A stretch of 63,193 nt of DNA, the filler included, from Octopus bimaculoides (Eukaryota): assembly GCF_001194135.2 (NCBI RefSeq). It is 4 parts of 4 records of this genome, joined end to end, with 100 filler letters (N's around TTAATTAATTAA, not from the genome) between each part and the next. Parts side by side here need not be neighbours in the genome. Positions count along the whole stretch, not along the records: positions 27,918 to 37,179 come from NC_068990.1; 3 more parts are not named here. One strand, written 5' to 3'. The position numbers were made by a program, and so were the translations under genes. Under the pieces are notes generated by a model. It had not been told where the DNA came from. It saw nothing but the letters and a program-made list of their open reading frames with translations, and searched no databases. This document shows positions 27,918 to 37,279 of this stretch, piece after piece; position 1 is the stretch's first letter, and each line of letters opens with the position of its first letter.

Positions 27918-27951
<34 letters not shown>

Positions 27952-28210
27952 ATTTTTTTCTATCAGTAATTAAAAATTACTGATAGAACAAGTTGAACTG
28001 GTTCATTTCGAGACCACGGTCAGCGCACTCATTGATCGCTAGTAGTAGTAAAAACATTTGATCTATGCTGACCCCAAAAGTGTGAGGCTTCTTTTGTCTC
28101 GTTATCGCACAGGAACGCCCACTGCTGATCTCCTGACCATCTGCCGAATGTATTTACAGACCTGTAGAATTTCGACTATTCACCAAGCTGCTTCTCTTCC
28201 TCCTACTCTC

Positions 28211-28454
28211 AAGACGATTACAATACCCGTGATTGTGGGAGCGCTTGAAATGACCAGTAAAAGAACTAAAAATTAGTCAAGAATGATCCCTGGATTACCA
28301 TTCATGCAGGGAGCGCAAAAGATAATATTAAGTGTTAACTGCAAACGTAAACAGACTGTATATGAAAAGAAAGAATGGTGGCAGAGGACTGATTAGTATA
28401 GGAGAACGCTTACCGAGTATTTGATAAATAGTGACGAAGATCTGCTGCAATATA
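28211..28454 (+). mobile_element. Two small R4-like LINE fragments
   Basis: 28211-28330 reads TIPVIVGALEMTSKRTKN*SRMIPGLP (REL C-terminus). 28343-28454 reads RLYMKRKNGGRGLISI/RRTLTEYLINSDEDLLQY and matches 31188-31309 at the nucleotide level, with an internal deletion. Confidence 0.75.
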
Positions 28455-28619
28455 CCGGGTCCCATATTATTATTGATATTTTTTAATGCTATATGTAGAA
28501 CGATGATGATAATGATAATCATTGTGGTTATGGAGGCGACACAATGCAAGCACGTTATTTATATATATGCGTATGTACATAGATGTGCACGTGTATATAC
28601 AAATAAAGAGAGGAAGGGA

Positions 28620-31600
28620 GAGATGGAATCTCAATAACAACTCTCGTGGGAACCCCCACGATCGACTCATGAAACCACGATGCAACACAACAAAGAAAGA
28701 ATTAACGCGAGAATGAAGCTATAGCCGATCATGGTGAAGGTTTCCCGCTAGGCACGTCCGAAACCGCACGTATCAGGGGCAGTGATCTGGCCTCGGACGG
28801 TCGTTATGTCACAACAGATCACATACACGGTGTGCGCAAAAGCAGACATAAGTGGACGAAGGAAGAGTACAATACATTTATTGAATGTCATGAAAGAAGA
28901 AAGCTGGAAAGGAGTCGCGGAGCAGGCCGACGTACGTTGAAATTTTGGATGGAAGAGGACATGCGTCCAATGTCAGAAAATAAACTAATGAACCACGTGG
29001 GAGTGATTAGGAGGAAGGGATACTTAACTGGAGTAGAAATATCTCGGATTAGTGAGAGTCTGAGAGACCCTGTGGATGGGCTACCAAGGATGGTCGGAGT
29101 TGAAAACAGAGAGGTAGAAGTTGAAAGCCTAGAGAAAAGTAGACAGGAGGAATAGGGAAATGGTATTGGGGCTGTTAAGGATGAGGAATAGAAACGTGAT
29201 ACAGTGAACCCTGATACTGTGGTGGGTGGACATGCAGGGGAAATGAACCAACTAGATAATGAATTGCTTGAAATTCAAAGACGACTCACCGACTTGATGA
29301 ATTCTCCAGAAGAAAAAATCTTCATGGATATGAGAAGGGTAGATAGGAGTATGATAAATAAAGTAACACAAAAGATAAATACTTTCATACCATACATCTA
29401 GACGGAGGACATAAAACAAACAAGGGATCTTCTCCTGGCTATTGTACTACTTGTTGAGTAGACATTGAAACTTAAGAGAACAAAAAATGGTAGAACAAAA
29501 GAACCATGGTGGAAACGACGCATTGAAAGGGACATTATGCGGGCAAGGCAAGATCTAGGAAAAATTGAGCAATGGTTAAGAGATCCTTTTAACCATTACT
29601 CAATTTTTATTAGATCTGGAAAAATGGGAAAAAGACCGGCCGAGAAAAATTAAAGAAATATAAATTACAGAAGAACGGGTTTTATGCAGTAATAGAGCAG
29701 TTAAAGCAGAGGATCATGGCAAAAAGCCAGAAGATGAGAAGATTTGTGAACAGAAATAAGCAGTTCGAGAACAGCTTGTTCAAAAATAACCCAAAGCAAT
29801 TCTTCCGAATGTTAGAAGGAGACAATAAGGAAAATGTTGCTCCTGATGCAAATCAAGTCAAGGAGTTCTGAAGCAGATTATGGAGAAACAAAGTGGTGCG
29901 TAAAAGGGATGCAATGTGGATAAGAACTATCAAGACAGAATTACAAGGAGGAAAGAAACAAAGGAATATTGTTGAAGATGTTAACGAACGAGTGGGTAAA
30001 GTGCCTAACTGGAAAGCCCCCGGACCAGATGAGATTCATGGCTTCTGGCTGAAGAGATACCTCTCGGTGCATGAAAGACTAACAGCTGAATTGAATGAAT
30101 GTGTCCTGAAAGGTACAGTCCCCGCGTGGATGGTGACTGGGAGGAAACACTTACAATGAAAGATAGAAGAAAGGGGAATATCGTGGGAACTACCGTCCCA
30201 TAGCATGCCTAAACATAATCTAGATGATTACTCACTGGAATATGTGCAACAAAGACATACACTATCCTGGCACAGGAAGAAATACTACCAAGGGAACAAA
30301 AAGGATGTAGGAAGAGTTCTCAGGGTACCAAAGATCACCTGGTCATCGATACAATAGTTTTGAGGCATTGTAAAAAACATCATACAAACATATCTCTGAC
30401 TTGGATTGACTTTAAGAAGGCATGTTATATGATGAGGCATATGATGTGATGCCTCATTCTTGGATAGTTCAATGCCTGCAGATATTTGGTGTTGCTGACA
30501 ACATCATAAATTTTCTGATGTACAGCATGAAAGAGTGGAAAACCAAATTATACTCAAGTAATGTATTCCTTGGAGAAGTTAATATTAAAAGGGGAATCTT
30601 CCAAGGTGACTCGTTTCTTCCGTTACATTTTGTAATTGCACTAATACCCATAACAATGACACTTAGGAAAGTTAAAATGGATTACCGATGTGGGAAGAAA
30701 GGCCTATCATTGAACCATCTTCTGTTTATGGACGGCCTGAAATTGTGTGGGAAGTTTGAAAAACAGATAGATTTCTTAACCAAAACAGTCCAGAAGTGTG
30801 GTAGGGACATCGGTATGGAATTTGGAATTATCAAATGCCCAGTACTTAATATGAAAAGAGGGAAGAAAGCATCCTGCAGAGGACTGCGGTTACCATGAGG
30901 AGGGGTGAACCCGATGATAGTGGGTACAAATATTTAGGGATTTTGGAGCTGGATGACATTCTACACAGAGAAATGAAAGTCAAGGTCAGCGAGACGTATC
31001 AAAAAAGGGTGAAGATGGTGTTGAAATCCAATATGAATGCCAAAAATTTGATTACTGCGATGAATATCTGGGCAGTTGCGGTGGTGAGATATAGTGCACC
31101 CATTCTCAAATGGACTAAGGAGGAAATATCAGCACTGGATAGAACAGGAAAGTTGATGACGCTGCATGGGGCACTACACCCTAAAGTAAACATAAACAGA
31201 CTGTATATGAAGAGAAAGAGAGCTAATTAGTATAGACCATTGTATAAAGAGTGAAAGGAGAACGCTTGCCGAGTATTTGATAAATAGTGATGAAGACCTG
31301 CTACAATATGTCGCGAAAGATATGGGTGTAAATGCAGATGAAATGATGAGCAAGGAAGAGTTTAACCAAAGAGCTGAGGAGAACAGAAAAGAAGACCTTC
31401 TTGAAATGAGAATGCATGGACAGTTTGAAAGGAATACACCAAACGTTAAGGATAATACAAAATCGTGGGCATAGCTTGAGCGAGGTGATTTGAAGTGTAC
31501 CACCGAAAGCCTGATCATTGCTGCACAAGACCAGGCTCTCGCTACCAAGCCAGTGAAGTATAACATCTATAAAACTTCTGACACACAGAAATGAAGACTC

Positions 31601-32235
31601 TGTGGAAAGAGTGTGGAAAATGTGACCCACTTGGTAAGTGGATGTGAGAGCCTTGCACAAAAAGAATGCAAGCGCTGTCACGATAAAGTGTATGTGTATC
31701 TTCACTGGCTCTTATGCTGTAAATACCAATATGAAGTAACAGAGAACTGGTATGAGCATGTAACAAGTAAAGTTATGCAGGAGGATGGAAAAGTAACGAT
31801 ACTCTGGGACTATGATTTTCAGACAAATCGTGTAATCGAACCCTGTCGGCCGGATATTGTCATATTGTATAAGAGAGACAAATACTGTCAGATCATTGAT
31901 GTAGCCATACCAAATGACATGAATGTTGTGAGTAAAGAGGTTAAAAAATCACCAAGTACTCCGAATTGAAAGTGGAATGCGAAAGGGTAATGTAAAATTG
32001 ATAATAGTGGTGATCAGAGCGTTGGTCTGAATCCCATTGAAACTTTAAACTTCTTAAGACAACTAGAAATCTCATGCAAGATTGATGTCTTGCAAAAAGC
32101 AGTCTTATTGGGCATAGAGCACATCTAAAGGAAAGTATTATCTGGCTGAGGGCCTTGTTGTGACTTGACAGATGACTAAAGACTTACCTACACTGTGTTA
32201 CAAAGGAATAATAATAATAATAATAATACTAATAA
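28620..32235 (+). pseudogene. Near-full-length decayed R4/Dong-like non-LTR retrotransposon (RT, CCHC, REL endonuclease)
   Basis: Motifs in order: HKWTKEE (~28847), PWWKRRIE, WKAPGPDEIHGFWLK (~30010), YRPIACLN (30191), EQKGCR, WIDFKKA (~30400), RGIFQGDS (~30590), HLLFMDG, GMEFG, YKYLG, (C>*)RLCGKSVENVTHLVSGC (~31590), RPDIV..IIDVAIP (~31845-31910); (AAT)n tail 32207-32235. Many stops and frameshifts; 5' boundary uncertain. Confidence 0.92.
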
Positions 32236-32291
32236 GCACAATATATGCAAAAACCTGGACTTGCCCCATGATAAAAACTGGTGGGAACACA
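32236..32291 (+). mobile_element. Start of another 5'-truncated R4-like copy directly after the (AAT)n tail
   Basis: Encodes HNICKNLDLPHDKNWWEH, equivalent to the HWxLCxxxxxxxxxxWYEH motif seen in the neighbours; runs into a gap. Confidence 0.65.
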
Positions 32292-32391
32292 NNNNNNNNN
32301 NNNNNNNNNNNNNNNNNNNNNNNNNNNNNNNNNNNNNNNNNNNNNNNNNNNNNNNNNNNNNNNNNNNNNNNNNNNNNNNNNNNNNNNNNNN

Positions 32392-32428
<37 letters not shown>

Positions 32429-33434
32429 TTCATATACACAACAGATTAGAATGTTGGAAAAGAAAAAATATTAACATCGGGCTACAAGTAACTTTAGATG
32501 CCAAGAAACCTCCTAAGTACCCTAGCTGTCCCTGATAACACTGTTTTCTGGAGTTGTATTAAACTGGATTCTATGCCTATTTCCTCTCTCCATTTTCTTA
32601 GATCTTTAGGGATAGTTCCCAATGCACCTATAACTACTGGGATACATTTTGCCCGCACTTTCCATAGTCTCTGTAATTCAATAGCTAGGTCCTGATACTT
32701 TGCTATTTTTTCTATACTTCACATTGATTTTTTCATCATTTGGGTCTGTAAAGTCAGTTATTTGGTACTTCTTACTCTCTTTATCTACTGCAACTAAATC
32801 AGGCGTTCTAGTTTCTATTACTCTGTCAGTCTGATTGTTAAAGTCCCACAACATCTTGTATTTCTTACTTTCTAGTACTCTACTAGGTTCATGTTCATAC
32901 CATTTATCAGTATGTTCAAATCGTAGCTTTCTACATAACCGCCAGTGGATTACTCTCCTTAAGTTGTCATATCTATTCTTGTTTTCTTTCTGTGCCAGCA
33001 TGCTACATTCACTTACTATATGAGTAGCACTTTCCTCTTTTGATTTGCATAACCTGCATTGGGAATCTACTTGGTTTTTATGTATCATGGCTTTTATCCA
33101 ATTAGTCCTTAGTGCTTTATCTTGTGCAGCTACTAACAAACTTTCTGTCTCCCTCTTTAGCCTTCCTTTCCGCAATCATAGCCATGTCCCACTACTACTA
33201 TTTTCTGCAACTATCTGTGGCAATTTACCATGCAGCGCTTTCTCTTGCCAGTCAGATAACTTCTGTTCCTTTTTCTAGTTTTTAACTTTGTTTGAGGTTT
33301 TTGGTTTCCCTATGTCTAGCAGCTTTTAGTAACCTTTCTTCACCATTACCTACATAGAAGTCTATATCTACTCTAGCTAACTCCACGCAGTCTTCTACTG
33401 ATATTAACTCTCTTTCGCCTTCCTTCCTAGGTAT
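32392..33434 (-). mobile_element. 5'-truncated R4/Dong-like LINE
   Basis: LKRETESLLVAAQDKALRTN..CRLCKSKEESATHIVSEC..WYEH..LWDF..RTPDL, ending LQKTVLSGTARVLRRFLGI*, short 3' UTR, (AAT)n tail 32392-32428; 5' end abuts (AAT)n at 33434. Confidence 0.92.
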
Positions 33435-34919
33435 ATTATTATTATTATTGTTCAGTAGTTTTAGTTTTATAACGTGCTTTCACTTCACTACCGAGCGCAA
33501 CTCTGTGCGCCTTGGGTATGTGCTGTGGTTTGCTATGGTGCTCTTATGGTTACTGTATTGAAGGTGTTTTGCGTAGGATGTGTGCAGTGCCCAGTAGTGC
33601 AATTTTCTGTATGTTATATATATTTGTAAGTCCTGGTGTTTTTGTTATGTATTTGTCTGAATATTTTTTTATTATACCTAAGGCACCTACTATGATAGGA
33701 ATTGTTTCTGCTTTTAAATTCCACATTCGAGTTACCTCTATTTCCAGGTCTTTGTATTTTGAAAGTTTTTCCATTTCTTTTAGGGNNNNNNNNNNNNNNN
33801 NNNNNNNNNNNNNNNNNNNNNNNNNNNNNNNNNNNNNNNNNNNNNNNNNNNNNNNNNNNNNNNNNNNNNNNNNNNNNNNNNNNNNNNNNNNNNNNNNNNN
33901 NNNNNNNNNNNNNNNNNNNNNNNNNNNNNNNNNNNNNNNNNNNNNNNNNNNNNNNNNNNNNNNNNNNNNNNNNNNNNNNNNNNNNNNNNNNNNNNNNNNN
34001 NNNNNNNNNNNNNNNNNNNNNNNNNNNNNNNNNNNNNNNNNNNNNNNNNNNNNNNNNNNNNNNNNNNNNNNNNNNNNNNNNNNNNNNNNNNNNNNNNNNN
34101 NNNNNNNNNNNNNNNNNNNNNNNNNNNNNNNNNNNNNNNNNNNNNNNNNNNNNNNNNNNNNNNNNNNNNNNNNNNNNNNNNNNNNNNNNNNNNNNNNNNN
34201 NNNNNNNNNNNNNNNNNNNNNNNNNNNNNNNNNNNNNNNNNNNNNNNNNNNNNNNNNNNNNNNNNNNNNNNNNNNNNNNNNNNNNNNNNNNNNNNNNNNN
34301 NNNNNNNNNNNNNNNNNNNNNNNNNNNNNNNNNNNNNNNNNNNNNNNNNNNNNNNNNNNNNNNNNNNNNNNNNNNNNNNNNNNNNNNNNNNNNNNNNNNN
34401 NNNNNNNNNNNNNNNNNNNNNNNNNNNNNNNNNNNNNNNNNNNNNNNNNNNNNNNNNNNNNNNNNNNNNNNNNNNNNNNNNNNNNNNNNNNNNNNNNNNN
34501 NNNNNNNNNNNNNNNNNNNNNNNNNNNNNNNNNNNNNNNNNNNNNNNNNNNNNNNNNNNNNNNNNNNNNNNNNNNNNNNNNNNNNNNNNNNNNNNNNNNN
34601 NNNNNNNNNNNNNNNNNNNNNNNNNNNNNNNNNNNNNNNNNNNNNNNNNNNNNNNNNNNNNNNNNNNNNNNNNNGTATATATAGCCTTTCTATGTCAGAT
34701 TTTGGGTGGTGCATCCTATATCCTATCATTATTTTTCTTGTTTTCCTGTCTATTTTACATAGTTCGTTTAGTGTCCAGTTAAGGATGTTGTAGCTGTAGC
34801 TTATAACTGGGACAGCTAAAGTGTTGATACCCATTATCTTGTTTTTAGCATTGAGCTGTTTTTAGTATTGATCTAACTCGTCTATAGTACTCTTTCTTTT
34901 TTTTTTCTTTCATTTTCTT

Positions 34920-34921
<2 letters not shown>
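33434..34921 (-). mobile_element. 5'-truncated R4/Dong-like LINE spanning a gap
   Basis: MKEKKRKEYYRRVRS..NAKNKIMGINTLAVPVISYS..HPKSDIERLY [gap] EKLSKYKDLEIE..IPIIVGALG..QKIALLGTAHILRK*; tail (AAT)n 33434-33449; 5' end abuts (AAT)n at 34922. That both sides of the gap are one copy is an inference. Confidence 0.85.
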
Positions 34922-34978
<57 letters not shown>

Positions 34979-35310
34979 TGGCTTTTGCTTTGTATTTGTA
35001 CAAGTTGACTGGAAGTCTCACCCAGAGACATCAAGACGCAAGTTAGAAGTTCAAGTTGGTGCTATGACTCGGCTGTCATATTTTGGGTTTTGCACAGAGT
35101 ATTATTCTAGAGAATGTTTTTGAAAACATAAGAAAATTAGAAGTTTGTTATAAAAGTAATTTGATTTTAAGATGATTGTGTGATCTTAAGGTCACAGTAA
35201 AAGACGTTTGCTATTACCTACATTTAAAGGTACTTTGACAATGTTTACAGATTAAAATGTTTTGGGGATTACACAGAAAATACTTTTTGTATGTTGTTTT
35301 CGGGATTACT
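34922..35310 (-). mobile_element. Probable 3' end/UTR of a further LINE copy ending in (AAT)n
   Basis: Unique sequence ending in a long (AAT)n (34922-34978) in the same orientation as the neighbours; no clear protein motif, so the assignment rests on position and tail. Confidence 0.45.
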
Positions 35311-35864
35311 TAACAGAGGTTTACTTTAGAGCCAAGAGTATTTCTTCTTGCGTTTGAGGGTATTGGCTTGACGTTACTCTGTTTATTGGTTTACAAGAAT
35401 TTGCAAGAACCAACAGACTCTAACTCTAACAATAGCACCGTAAAATAATAAGATCAACTTTATAATGTCCTCATAGACATCAGTGTAGATATATTTATTA
35501 GGACATAACTGAACACACTCAATGCTCTGTACAACGCATTTATAATGTCCTAAAACACCATTATATTAGTGTTCCATATAATTAACAGCAATATGGAGGA
35601 ATAACGTCTACAGGTTGTTCGTTGATAGACGCGTTTAATAGATGTGGATGCGATGAGGAAGGAAGAACTGAGTGAACTCTTTGACACAAGACATATGCAT
35701 AACAAGTGTACACAATTTTTATATATTAAAAAAAGCTTATAATAAAATCAATGAACTTTGAAGGAAAAGCGTAATCACATCTGTTCTATGTCGATTGTCT
35801 TTAGGGACTTAGTTTTGCCAGATTGGAGAAGTGTGAAGTGATACATAAACAACTAAATGTGTTA

Positions 35865-36146
35865 GTGAAGGTGCGTGGCTTATCGATTAGGATATTCGGC
35901 TCACGATCGTAAGGTAGTGAGTTCGAGTCCCGGCGGCGCGTTATGTTATTGAGCAAGACACTTTATTTCAGCTGGCAAAAATGCGTTGTACCTGTAATTC
36001 AAAGGGTCACGCTGAATTTCTGTAAGAACTACGTTAATGGTATGCGTGTCTATAGAAAGCCCACCCACTTGCAAGTTAATTTCACGAGCAGGCTGTTCCG
36101 TTGATCGGATCAAACTGGAACACTCACCGTCGTAAATGACGGAGTG
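35865..36146 (+). mobile_element. tRNA-headed SINE (family 3), internally deleted
   Basis: gtggcttatcgattagg (A-box-like), gagttcgagtccc (B-box); 3' part matches the reverse complement of 51310-51480. Confidence 0.8.
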
Positions 36147-36348
36147 TTAAAATTGCGTCAGTACAGAAGGAATCTAAGCACACTACACATAGAAGTGAAG
36201 ATATGTGTGTAGGTGAAAGGTTCATGCAGCAGCGTGGTCCAGCATTTGATTCCATTACATAATACACTGAGCAATTAGCTTTTACCATAGACTTGTAAGT
36301 GGAAATTGGCTAATGGAAACTGCGTAGAAGCCATTGCGTACACACATA

Positions 36349-36838
36349 TAGAGGCGTTATCAAACATTTCTCGGACTAGTTTTGTAGCGCGCCAACAGAT
36401 GGTAGCACACGATTGCGTGCACAATGAGAACTAGCAGTGACCTTCATGAGGCAGTGTGCCGAGTGACATCCCTGTGTTTATTTCGCAAGTTGTGAAATTT
36501 GTGTTTTTGTGATCACGTGTATGCTGTAGTCTGCGATTTTGTGAGTTTCTCGCCAAAAACAAAATGGTATCACTTCCGCACCCACCCTCTTCGTCAGATT
36601 TGGCACCTGCAGACTTCCATCTCTTCCCCCAAGACGACAAGGCGGCTTAAAGGTTACCATTTTAACAGCGTTGTCGAGGTCCAGAGCGAATCGCAGAGGG
36701 TCCTTAACTCGCTTACGGAAAACAACATCCAAACAGGATTCCAAAAGTGGCAGGAAAACTGGGACCGGTGTATTGCTATGTAAGGTAACTATTTCGAAGA
36801 TGATATTAAAACTTTGATAAATATGATACTACCTCGTA
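36349..36838 (+). mobile_element. Internally deleted mariner element
   Basis: EFLAKNKMVSLPHPPSSSDLAPADFHLFPK..LKG..FQKWQENWDRCIAM*GNYFE matches the HPPYSPDLAP...GDYFE C-terminus of mariner transposases; degenerate TIRs TAGAGGCGTTATCAAA / ...GATACTACCTCGTA. Confidence 0.9.
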
Positions 36839-36920
36839 CCTACACGCAATACACGCAATACACGCAATACACGCACGCACAAACACACACACGCACACAA
36901 ACAAACAAACAAACACACAC

Positions 36921-37130
36921 TATTATTCTTTTATTCTTTTGTTTCATTTGACTGCAGCCATGCTGGAACACCGTCTTTTAGTCGAACAAATCGACCCCAG
37001 AACTTATTCTTAGTAAGCCTAGTACTAATTCTATCGGTCTCTTTTGCCGAACTGCTAAGTTACTTGGACGTAAATACACCAACATCTGTTGTCAAGTGAC
37101 CGGGGGAGGGGCAAACATGGATACACAAAC
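36921..37130 (-). mobile_element. Family 1 SINE 3' domain
   Basis: Close match to 21215-21400. Confidence 0.85.
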
Positions 37131-37134
37131 ATAT

Positions 37135-37165
<31 letters not shown>

Positions 37166-37279
37166 CATATATATATATANNNNNNNNNNNNNNNNNNNNN
37201 NNNNNNNNNNNNNNNNNNNNNNNTTAATTAATTAANNNNNNNNNNNNNNNNNNNNNNNNNNNNNNNNNNNNNNNNNNNN

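What the first reader, a model, noticed from the sequence alone, without database searches (positions are those of the whole stretch)
28211..35310. Chain of R4/Dong-like retrotransposons joined through (AAT)n tracts
Seen: at least seven pieces in 7 kb. At three junctions a 5'-truncated copy begins immediately after the (AAT)n tail of another (32235/32236, 33434, 34921/34922), and the plus and minus chains meet tail to tail across the 32292-32391 gap. The proteins are clearly diverged from each other. Known: R4-clade elements encode RT, CCHC and a REL endonuclease, and Dong inserts in TAA repeats. Inference: each insertion supplies a new target in its tail, giving self-seeding arrays shared by several subfamilies; this may also help generate the genome's (AAT)n load.
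Basis: partly seen in the sequence, partly recalled or inferred. Interest (0 to 1): 0.72.

Follow-up and report, generated by a model that had tools for sequence, protein, structure and literature searches.

The report
Chained dead Dong retrotransposons at (AAT)n
This stretch is a pile-up of six dead copies of a known kind of jumping gene (Dong/R4-type) that inserts only into AAT/TAA repeats and ends in one itself, so copies line up head to tail; it is real but ordinary for this family.

Summary
The observation mostly holds. Between 28211 and 34978 lie six copies or fragments, in seven blocks, of one family of non-LTR retrotransposons. The family has a reverse transcriptase, a CCHC motif and a C-terminal restriction-like (PD..D..K) endonuclease.

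- **Junctions.** One copy (A, 28534-32235, + strand) is full length but dead; the rest are 5'-truncated. A's (AAT)n tail runs straight into fragment D at 32235/6, and C's tail runs straight into B at 33433/4. C starts at the edge of an (AAT)19 tract (34921/2). No element could be found behind that tract.
- **Gaps.** Gap 2 (33786-34674) most likely lies inside a single copy, C. Gap 1 separates opposite strands, so "tail to tail" cannot be verified.
- **Lineages.** A, B and C are three deep lineages, 31-44% identical in protein.
- **Other genomes.** 27 of 44 relatives carry (AAT)n 68-188 bp after the ORF. Full-length copies have (AAT)n on both sides. Head-to-tail links also occur.
- **Identity.** This matches Dong, the (TAA)n-specific branch of the R4 clade, which is known in molluscs and abundant in octopus genomes.

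The "self-seeding" reading is the natural consequence of that target specificity. It is plausible but not proven against single-event template jumping. Novelty and interest are low.

The parts
28211..28335 (+). P1: a fragment of the ORF's C-terminus ('IPVIVGALE...QKIILS'). It lacks the last ~10 codons, the 3' UTR and the tail. It is closest to the C-type lineage.
   Evidence: HMM 1075-1100 scores 5.0 bits, and 0 of 500 shuffles reach that. It is 44% identical to C's 3' part over 41 aa.
28341..28460 (+). P2: an internal fragment of the A-type lineage ('ANVNRLYMKRKNGGRGLIS...'). It is joined to P1 without any (AAT)n.
   Evidence: It is 76% nt identical to A 31188-31309. HMM 801-822 matches at E 5.6e-7. 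It is 71% aa identical to A.
28504..28533 (+). A decayed (AAT)~10 tract (GAT GAT GAT AAT GAT AAT CAT TGT GGT TAT). It is the 5' flank of copy A.
   Evidence: It aligns column for column with the (TAA)7 that precedes GGGGGCGA in the closest intact relative, L082.
28534..32206 (+). Copy A: full length and dead. The 5' UTR runs from about 28534 to 28680 and starts GGAGGCGA. The ORF runs from about 28681 to 32149, and the 3' UTR is 32150-32206. It holds an N-terminal 'KWTKEEY..ECH' region, RT, CCHC and the endonuclease.
   Evidence: HMM 37-1126 is spread over at least 5 frame segments with more than 10 in-frame stops. The RT motif FMDD reads FMDG, and the first Cys of CCHC is a TGA stop. It is 56% identical to intact P0001. 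Pfam finds RVT_1.
32207..32235 (+). The (AAT)9.7 tail of A.
   Evidence: TRF. It starts 57 nt after A's stop codon, which is typical for the family.
32236..32291 (+). D: the 5' end of a 5'-truncated copy ('HNICKNLDLPHDKNWWEH'). It runs into gap 1.
   Evidence: HMM 977-994 scores 3.6 bits, and 0 of 1000 shuffles reach that; the other five frames give nothing. A short BLAST alone is not significant.
32292..32391 (.). Assembly gap 1 (100 N). It separates the + chain (A, D) from the - chain (C, B).
   Evidence: The flanks are on opposite strands.
32392..32428 (-). The (AAT)12 tail of B, written (TAT)12 on the + strand. The contig begins inside it.
   Evidence: TRF.
32429..33433 (-). Copy B: 5'-truncated at HMM 808. 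It keeps CCHC, the PD..D..K endonuclease, the C-terminus and a 65-nt 3' UTR. It has 2 frameshifts and 3 stops.
   Evidence: Its best relatives are P0161, P0072 and P0057 at 54%. Pfam finds zf-RVT.
33434..33449 (-). The (AAT)5 tail of C. It abuts the first codon of B, with 2-5 nt of ambiguity in 'AATATACC'.
   Evidence: TRF. The sequence was read.
33450..33785 (-). Copy C, 3' part: the last 73 codons and a 100-nt 3' UTR.
   Evidence: HMM 1052-1124 matches at E 1.2e-20.
33786..34674 (.). Assembly gap 2 (889 N). It most likely lies inside copy C, where about 726 bp are expected.
34675..34921 (-). Copy C, 5' part: 5'-truncated at HMM 726, in the RT thumb region.
   Evidence: HMM 726-809 matches at E 5.4e-23. 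The top relatives are P0279, P0267 and P0261, the same as for the 3' part.
34922..34978 (-). (AAT)19 directly 5' of C. It is either the remaining target microsatellite or the tail of a copy that can no longer be recognised.
   Evidence: TRF. No homology was found beyond it.

Best explanation
**What it is.** The locus is an old cluster of Dong-type (R4-clade) non-LTR retrotransposons. These elements integrate only into (TAA)n/(AAT)n repeats.

**How it works (inferred from the R2/Dong literature, not shown here).**
1. The element's restriction-like endonuclease nicks the TTA strand of the repeat.
2. The nicked strand pairs with the (UAA)n at the 3' end of the element's RNA.
3. That strand primes reverse transcription.
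4. Synthesis often stops early, which gives 5'-truncated copies. The cDNA end is then joined to the upstream part of the repeat.

**Consequence.** Every insertion ends up with (AAT)n on both sides, in the sense orientation. Both tracts, including the new copy's own tail, remain valid targets. Later insertions of any subfamily therefore land next to earlier ones in the same orientation and build head-to-tail chains.

**Shown here.**
- The family identity.
- The exact junctions.
- The orientation rule.
- The presence of three deep lineages.
- The same layout in other genomes.

All copies in the window are dead relics. The locus has no present function.
For: **Architecture.**
- Relatives have a single ORF of about 1130-1220 aa.
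- FMDD, the CCHC residues and the PD, D and K residues are invariant.
- R2 proteins are the best solved relatives (E 2.7e-45). The alignment runs through RT, CCHC and the endonuclease.

**Window.**
- The copy map and junctions are given.
- Each of the three tails sits 57-100 nt after a stop codon.
- All four (AAT)n tracts of four or more units touch a copy end.
- A is full length. Its 5' end GGAGGCGA follows a decayed (AAT)10, just as GGGGGCGA follows (TAA)7 in the closest intact relative.

**Other genomes.**
- 27 of 44 copies have (AAT)n of four or more units 68-188 bp after the last codon. The controls are 2 of 799 interior windows and 6 of 237 far-flank windows.
- 13 full-length copies have (AAT)n upstream. 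3 of 17 truncated copies abut (AAT)n within 6 bp, where about 0.01 is expected.
- Long-read contigs L001, L084 and L085 show intact copies flanked on both sides.
- Head-to-tail links exist: the 3' UTR of L013, then (AAT)11, then the 5' start in L005. L005's tail is followed by an L016-type 5' start, and L001's tail by 19 nt of its own 5' start.
- A 534-bp non-coding unit sits between (AAT)n tracts in L007 and L013. In L016 it is 5'-truncated right after a Dong tail.

**Literature.**
- Dong targets (TAA)n in insects, molluscs and cnidarians (PMC3812793, PMC7998251).
- Dong-R4 elements are abundant in octopus genomes (PMC13282606, PMC8967140).
Against: - No reference Dong or R4 sequence was available. 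Placement in the R4 clade rests on architecture, target and literature, not on an RT tree. HERO and NeSL relatives also include microsatellite-specific families (PMC4640811).
- Rfam finds no HDV-like ribozyme at any 5' end.
- Pfam finds no Myb/SANT domain in the N-terminus.
- The P1/P2 and P2/A joins are not through a clean (AAT)n tract, so other rearrangements also shaped the locus.
- The two chains converge. Strand-specific insertion alone does not produce that.
- The order of insertions, and whether tails rather than one ancestral tract were hit, cannot be read from the sequence.
Confidence: 0.8

Rival explanations
1. Single-event concatemers. During one integration the reverse transcriptase reached the 5' end of one (broken) RNA. 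It then jumped end to end onto the (UAA)n 3' end of a second RNA of another subfamily. C-B (and A-D) would then have entered the genome together, and no tail was ever used as a target.
For: - The layout is exactly what a jump predicts: the upstream copy's complete 3' UTR and a short tail (only 5 units for C) run directly into the downstream copy's truncated 5' end.
- End-to-end template jumping is a documented property of the related R2 enzyme (Bibillo and Eickbush 2004, cited in PMC2881922).
- The density of disabling mutations is similar in A, B and C, at about 1.5-2.6 per 100 codons.
Against: - The rival is not needed. In other genomes single copies sit between two (AAT)n tracts, which shows that ordinary insertion into the repeat is the rule.
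- Template jumping has not been shown in vivo or for Dong.
- The mutation counts are too small to date the copies.
Confidence: 0.12
2. One large ancestral (AAT)n microsatellite was hit repeatedly. The tracts between copies are the split remains of that tract. Element tails add no target, so there is no "self-seeding".
For: - (AAT)19 at 34922-34978 has no recognisable element behind it.
- Intact relatives sit in genomic (AAT)n of 18-27 units.
Against: - In target-primed synthesis on a repeat, tail and target cannot be told apart, so the distinction is partly semantic.
- The tracts after A, B and C lie at the family's usual tail position.
- One tract has one orientation, which cannot account for both chains.
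Confidence: 0.25
3. Assembly artefact. Contigs or reads from different Dong copies were joined wrongly through the shared microsatellite.
For: - Two gaps lie in the region. One contig starts inside a tail (32392), and both breaks are at repeat-rich places.
- Short metagenome contigs of relatives end in (AAT)n.
Against: - The three junction tracts are 16, 29 and 57 bp long. I judge that an ordinary read would span each of them together with unique sequence on both sides; the read length of this assembly is not known.
- The joined copies are only 31-44% identical, so no repeat collapse is involved.
- The same layout occurs in long-read contigs of other genomes.
Confidence: 0.04

Closest known systems
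Dong (Bombyx mori; also DongAg and DongBg), the (TAA)n-specific branch of the R4 clade of non-LTR retrotransposons
   Same: - It has a single ORF with RT, CCHC and a C-terminal restriction-like endonuclease, and no AP endonuclease.
- It inserts into (TAA)n and carries a (TAA)n 3' tail.
- It occurs in molluscs and cnidarians (PMC3812793, PMC7998251).
- The N-terminal 'KW.KEE...EC' region lies where a SANT/Myb-like domain was reported.
   Different: - No reference sequence could be compared, so the relation rests on features, not on a tree.
- The copies here are dead relics of three lineages that are only 31-44% identical.
- The 5' HDV-like ribozyme shown for Dong (PMC3774820) was not detected.
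R4 (Ascaris and other nematodes)
   Same: Same clade and same domain order.
   Different: R4 is specific for 28S rDNA, not for a microsatellite.
R2 (Bombyx, birds and others), the nearest solved structures (9nl2, 9dou, 8gh6)
   Same: RT, CCHC and the PD..D..K endonuclease align (E 2.7e-45). R2 is the model for target-primed reverse transcription and for end-to-end template jumping.
   Different: R2 targets 28S rDNA and has N-terminal zinc fingers plus a Myb domain. It has no microsatellite tail.
Telomere-repeat-specific elements (TRAS/SART of Bombyx) and HeT-A/TART arrays of Drosophila (from my own knowledge)
   Same: The logic is the same: a repeat-specific element whose insertion recreates the target, which gives head-to-tail arrays of mixed families.
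   Different: They use an AP-type endonuclease or end attachment. They act at telomeric repeats and chromosome ends, and some are co-opted for a host function.
Other microsatellite-specific RLE elements: Togen ((TG)n, NeSL-related) and some HERO families (PMC4640811)
   Same: They carry a restriction-like endonuclease and are specific for microsatellites.
   Different: They target other repeat units and belong to other clades. They were not excluded here by phylogeny.

Membership tests
R4/Dong clade | A reverse transcriptase of the non-LTR type in a single long ORF | tested here: met
   Pfam finds RVT_1 in A's fragment and in intact relatives. Relatives have a single ORF of 1130-1220 aa. FMDD is invariant.
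R4/Dong clade | A CCHC motif and a PD..(D/E)..K restriction-like endonuclease C-terminal to RT, with no AP endonuclease | tested here: met
   C1028, C1031, H1040, C1045, P1114, D1115, D1130 and K1146 are invariant. These residues are present in B, and in A except for one Cys that has become a stop. They align to the R2 CCHC and RLE. No Exo_endo_phos hit was found.
R4/Dong clade | No N-terminal zinc fingers; a diverged SANT/Myb-like region instead (PMC7998251) | tested here: inconclusive
   The conserved 'KWSKEEN..V.EC...W...G....Q.L.DQ.R.I.K.GWL' block is seen in the consensus, and no Cys/His finger pattern is. Pfam gives no Myb/SANT hit. The paper itself needed HHpred.
Dong (within R4) | Insertion into (TAA)n, with the repeat on both sides in the sense orientation | tested here: met
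   Window. Relatives.
Dong (within R4) | A 3' end formed by (TAA)n a short distance after the stop codon | tested here: met
   27 of 44 relatives have it, against 2 of 799 and 6 of 237 control windows. In the window it follows A, B and C at 57, 65 and 100 nt.
R4/Dong clade | The RT phylogeny groups the element with reference R4 and Dong, apart from R2, NeSL, CRE and HERO | not tested
   No reference sequences were reachable with these tools. Only R2 and L1 (from the PDB) could be compared.
Dong (within R4) | An HDV-like self-cleaving ribozyme at the 5' end (PMC3774820) | tested here: inconclusive
   Rfam models give no hit in the window, in L001 or in 11 other loci. Such ribozymes are often missed by covariance models. 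A conserved 5' start (GGRGGCGA, or AGCGCCAG in another group) exists.
R2 clade | Insertion at the 28S rDNA site | tested here: not met
   The flanks are (AAT)n, and Rfam finds no rRNA.

The most novel reading that the evidence does not exclude
Chains of Dong copies may not be a passive by-product. One possibility is that mixed-lineage chains, including non-coding passengers such as the 534-bp unit in L007, L013 and L016, arise in single events when the RT jumps between RNAs. Another is that arrays are a propagation strategy. In that case read-through from an upstream copy, followed by 5' processing, expresses promoter-less downstream copies, and the family becomes a main source of a genome's (AAT)n tracts.
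Probability: 0.15. Interest if true: 0.45.

Novelty: already known. Interest (0 to 1): 0.18.

Why it matters
The practical value is for annotation. The whole 6.5 kb is dead Dong-R4 sequence plus its microsatellites. The two assembly gaps fall at its repeats, and no host gene or regulatory feature needs to be sought here.

As biology, it is a clean worked example of how a repeat-specific retrotransposon that ends in its own target builds mixed-lineage head-to-tail clusters and keeps (AAT)n tracts in the genome. Dong's (TAA)n specificity and its abundance in molluscs are published. I found no paper in the held library that describes Dong chains explicitly. The key papers (Xiong and Eickbush 1993; Kojima and Fujiwara 2004) are not held, so I do not claim novelty.

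Tried and rejected
- **A seventh element in 34979-35310.** The protein HMM finds nothing. blastn against 3' ends of A, B, C and about 30 relatives gives only chance-level hits. By eye there is a faint resemblance to the '..VLS.*G' ORF end, which I dropped.
- **HDV-like ribozyme.** Rfam finds none. A hand search was not pursued.
- **tRNA genes.** ARAGORN finds none in the window or in the tRNA-like 5' ends of L011, L012 and L044.
- **Names or species from the databases.** The cluster look-up gave no useful names. The window's own proteins are not in the protein collection: the best hits are 54-56% identical. The source genome therefore could not be traced. "Octopus" rests only on my memory of the SINE at about 35850-36140.
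- **A truncation hot spot near HMM 801-809.** ORF starts of database fragments cluster there. That is an artefact of start-codon calling and of my query range. Truncated copies that abut (AAT)n elsewhere start at HMM 225, 495 and 538.
- **Dong 1993 paper.** It is not held.
- **Supplements of PMC7998251.** They hold no sequences.
- **Mariner-like remnant.** Pfam gives no hit.
Full report
**What is in the sequence.** The piece 27918-37179 was read in full. Tandem Repeats Finder gives four AAT-type tracts:
- (AAT)9.7 at 32207-32235
- (TAT)12 at 32392-32428
- (TAT)5 at 33434-33449
- (ATT)19 at 34922-34978

Six-frame translation shows broken pieces of a retrotransposon ORF on both strands. Pfam recognises RVT_1 in one fragment and zf-RVT in another. 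At the DNA level the pieces do not match each other. The one exception is 28343-28453 against 31188-31309, at 76% identity. They are therefore not recent duplicates.

**Relatives.** A stitched translation of the + strand copy finds 940 proteins. Many are intact single ORFs of 1130-1220 aa on contigs of about 3.7-4.3 kb. The best are 56% identical.

An alignment of 28 of them has these invariant residues:
- the RT motif FMDD
- a C..C...H....C motif
- P-D, D and K of a restriction-like endonuclease

A profile of this alignment finds R2 retrotransposon proteins as the best solved relatives (E 2.7e-45). LINE-1 ORF2p is far behind (about 1e-21). The alignment runs through RT, the CCHC motif and the endonuclease. 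The family is therefore a non-LTR element of the R2 group, which carries a restriction-like endonuclease.

**Map of the window.** I built a profile HMM from 78 full-length relatives (1127 states) and searched all six frames. Short pieces were checked against shuffles.

| Piece | Coordinates, strand | HMM positions |
|---|---|---|
| P1 | 28211-28335 + | 1075-1100 |
| P2 | 28341-28460 + | 801-822 |
| A | ORF 28829-32143 + | 37-1126 |
| D | 32236-32291 + | 977-994 |
| B | 33434-32503 - | 808-1125 |
| C | 34921-34673 - and 33780-33565 - | 726-809 and 1052-1124 |

Nothing is detected in 34979-35310, either with the HMM or by blastn against 3' ends of about 30 copies.

A is full length:
- Aligned with the closest intact relative (L082), its 5' end GGAGGCGA at 28534 matches GGGGGCGA. 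In L082 that motif follows (TAA)7 directly.
- The triplets before it in the window (GAT GAT GAT AAT GAT AAT CAT TGT GGT TAT) align with that repeat. They read as a decayed (AAT)10.

A is dead:
- It has at least four frame changes and more than ten stops.
- FMDD reads FMDG.
- The first CCHC cysteine is a stop codon.

B, C, D, P1 and P2 all lack the RT.

**The junctions.** All three lie inside contigs.
- D's homology starts 2 nt after A's tail (32235/6).
- B's first aligned codon overlaps the last base of C's tail (33433/4).
- C's first aligned codon is the base next to (AAT)19 (34921/2).

The tails of A, B and C start 57, 65 and 100 nt after their stop codons. With four tracts in about 7 kb, three 5' ends within 2 nt of a tract end would happen by chance at roughly 1e-7 (my estimate).

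The P1/P2 join and the P2/A interval are not clean (AAT)n junctions. The locus has therefore also suffered deletions or other rearrangements.

**The gaps.**
- Gap 2 (33786-34674): both flanks are on the minus strand and collinear. The missing 242 codons would need 726 bp, against 889 N. Both halves have the same three best relatives in the same order (P0279, P0267, P0261). These differ from the best relatives of A (P0002, P0001, P0003) and of B (P0161, P0072, P0057). One copy across the gap is the simplest reading. The frame cannot be decided because the gap length is an estimate.
- Gap 1 (32292-32391): the left flank is D's body on the + strand, and D needs about 480 bp more to reach its own tail. 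The right flank is B's tail on the - strand. The claim that the chains meet tail to tail is therefore an inference about unread sequence.

**Divergence.** Protein identities are A-B 37% (323 aa), A-C 44% and 31%, B-C 41%, A-P2 71% and C-P1 44%. Each of A, B and C is closer to proteins from other genomes (54-64%) than to the others. Three deep lineages share this locus.

**Is the (AAT)n link a property of the family?** I fetched 85 loci from other genomes.

3' side:
- Of 44 copies with a complete C-terminus and enough downstream sequence, 27 have (AAT)n of four or more units on the sense strand, 68-188 bp after the last codon.
- The controls are 2 of 799 interior windows and 6 of 237 far-flank windows.

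5' side:
- Thirteen full-length copies have (AAT)n upstream of the 5' UTR.
- Three of 17 truncated copies abut (AAT)n within 6 bp, where about 0.01 is expected.

Long-read contigs show intact copies with the repeat on both sides:
- L001: (TAA)19, element, (AAT)8
- L085 and L084

Head-to-tail links also occur elsewhere:
- In L005 the 42 nt before the 5' (AAT)11 are identical to the 3' UTR end of L013.
- The sequence after L005's tail is an L016-type 5' start.
- In L001 the tail is followed by 19 nt of the element's own 5' start.
- A 534-bp non-coding unit lies between two (AAT)n tracts in L007 and L013 (99.8% identical). In L016 it appears 5'-truncated right after a Dong tail.

The layout seen in the window is therefore normal for this family.

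**What it is called.** Dong is the (TAA)n-specific member of the R4 clade (PMC3812793, PMC3774820). [quoted passage not shown] Dong-R4 elements are abundant in cephalopods. *Octopus vulgaris* has five recently active families with 1129 insertions (PMC13282606, PMC8967140).

The features tested here fit:
- domain order
- target
- tail
- no zinc fingers seen
- a conserved 'KW.KEE..EC' block

Three things were not settled:
- I could not run an RT tree with reference sequences.
- Pfam does not see the Myb-like domain.
- Rfam does not see the HDV-like ribozyme known from Dong.

**Mechanism.** By analogy with R2, the endonuclease nicks the TTA strand. The RNA's (UAA)n end pairs with that strand, and reverse transcription starts there. 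This step is inferred from the literature, not shown here. Early termination gives 5'-truncated copies. At the C-B junction 2-5 nt ('ATAT') could belong to either partner, which fits joining by microhomology.

Each insertion leaves (AAT)n on both sides in the sense orientation, and later insertions can use either tract. The sequence shows the resulting chains. It does not show the order of events, or whether tails or the remains of one ancestral tract were hit.

A real alternative is that the RT jumped from the end of one RNA to the 3' end of another within one event. That property is documented for R2 (Bibillo and Eickbush 2004, cited in PMC2881922). Misassembly is unlikely: the junction tracts are 16-57 bp long and the joined copies are very different.

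The convergent orientation of the two chains is not explained by insertion into tails. It needs an inversion, two neighbouring tracts of opposite polarity, or a scaffolding error.

**Verdict.** The family assignment and the target specificity are supported. The "self-seeding" idea is reasonable but follows from known Dong biology. This is a known kind of element in a known kind of arrangement, all copies are dead, and interest is low.

Noticed in passing
window 35850-36140 (+): A tRNA-derived SINE-like sequence ('ggctcacgatcgtaaggtagtgagttcgagtcccggc...'). From memory it resembles the abundant octopus SINE. ARAGORN and Rfam call no tRNA there.
   Followed up: partly
window 36500-36800 (+): A broken reading frame ('HPPSSSDLAPADFHLFP ... 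QKWQENWDRCIA..GNYFE') that looks like the C-terminus of a mariner/Tc1 transposase. Pfam gives no hit.
   Followed up: partly
window 29551-29617: A 67-bp near-perfect palindrome (84%) inside copy A, at a frame change between HMM 275 and 278. It looks like a small fold-back duplication.
   Followed up: no
window 27955-27991: A 37-bp inverted repeat ('ctatcagtaatt...aattactgatag') just after the (AC)15 at the start of the piece.
   Followed up: no
window 28341, 33434 and 34675: Three breakpoints fall within 9 codons of the 1127-state profile: P2's 5' end (HMM 801), B's 5' end (808) and the contig break inside C (809). The DNA there is TATATA-like ('RLYI/M'), which might favour joining to (TAA)n or break assemblies. 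Other genomes do not support a hot spot.
   Followed up: partly
L019 4022-4114; L021 3095-3135; L006 4022-4048 and 4280-4387: In three relatives the 3' UTR is followed by (TTA)n/(ATT)n instead of (TAA)n. These lineages seem to use the opposite strand of the same repeat.
   Followed up: partly
L012 about 320-390; L044 about 107-180; L011 10-60: [quoted passage not shown] ARAGORN and Rfam do not call a tRNA. It could be a 5'-processing or promoter module that stands in for the HDV-like ribozyme.
   Followed up: partly
L007 3807-4340; L013 87-625; L016 3699-3769: A 534-bp non-coding unit bounded by (AAT)n tracts, 99.8% identical between two contigs. It is 5'-truncated after a Dong tail in a third contig. 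It is a candidate non-autonomous passenger of the Dong machinery.
   Followed up: partly
L001 9681-9708 and 13533-13560: After the tail of an intact copy comes a second copy of the first ~19-28 nt of the element's 5' end ('aagtttttatgtggagggc'), followed by unrelated sequence. It is either a stub of a neighbouring copy or an unusually long target duplication.
   Followed up: no
window 36841-36920 and 37121-37171: (TACACGCAA)4 and AC-rich simple repeats at the right end of the piece. They are unrelated to the Dong cluster.
   Followed up: no
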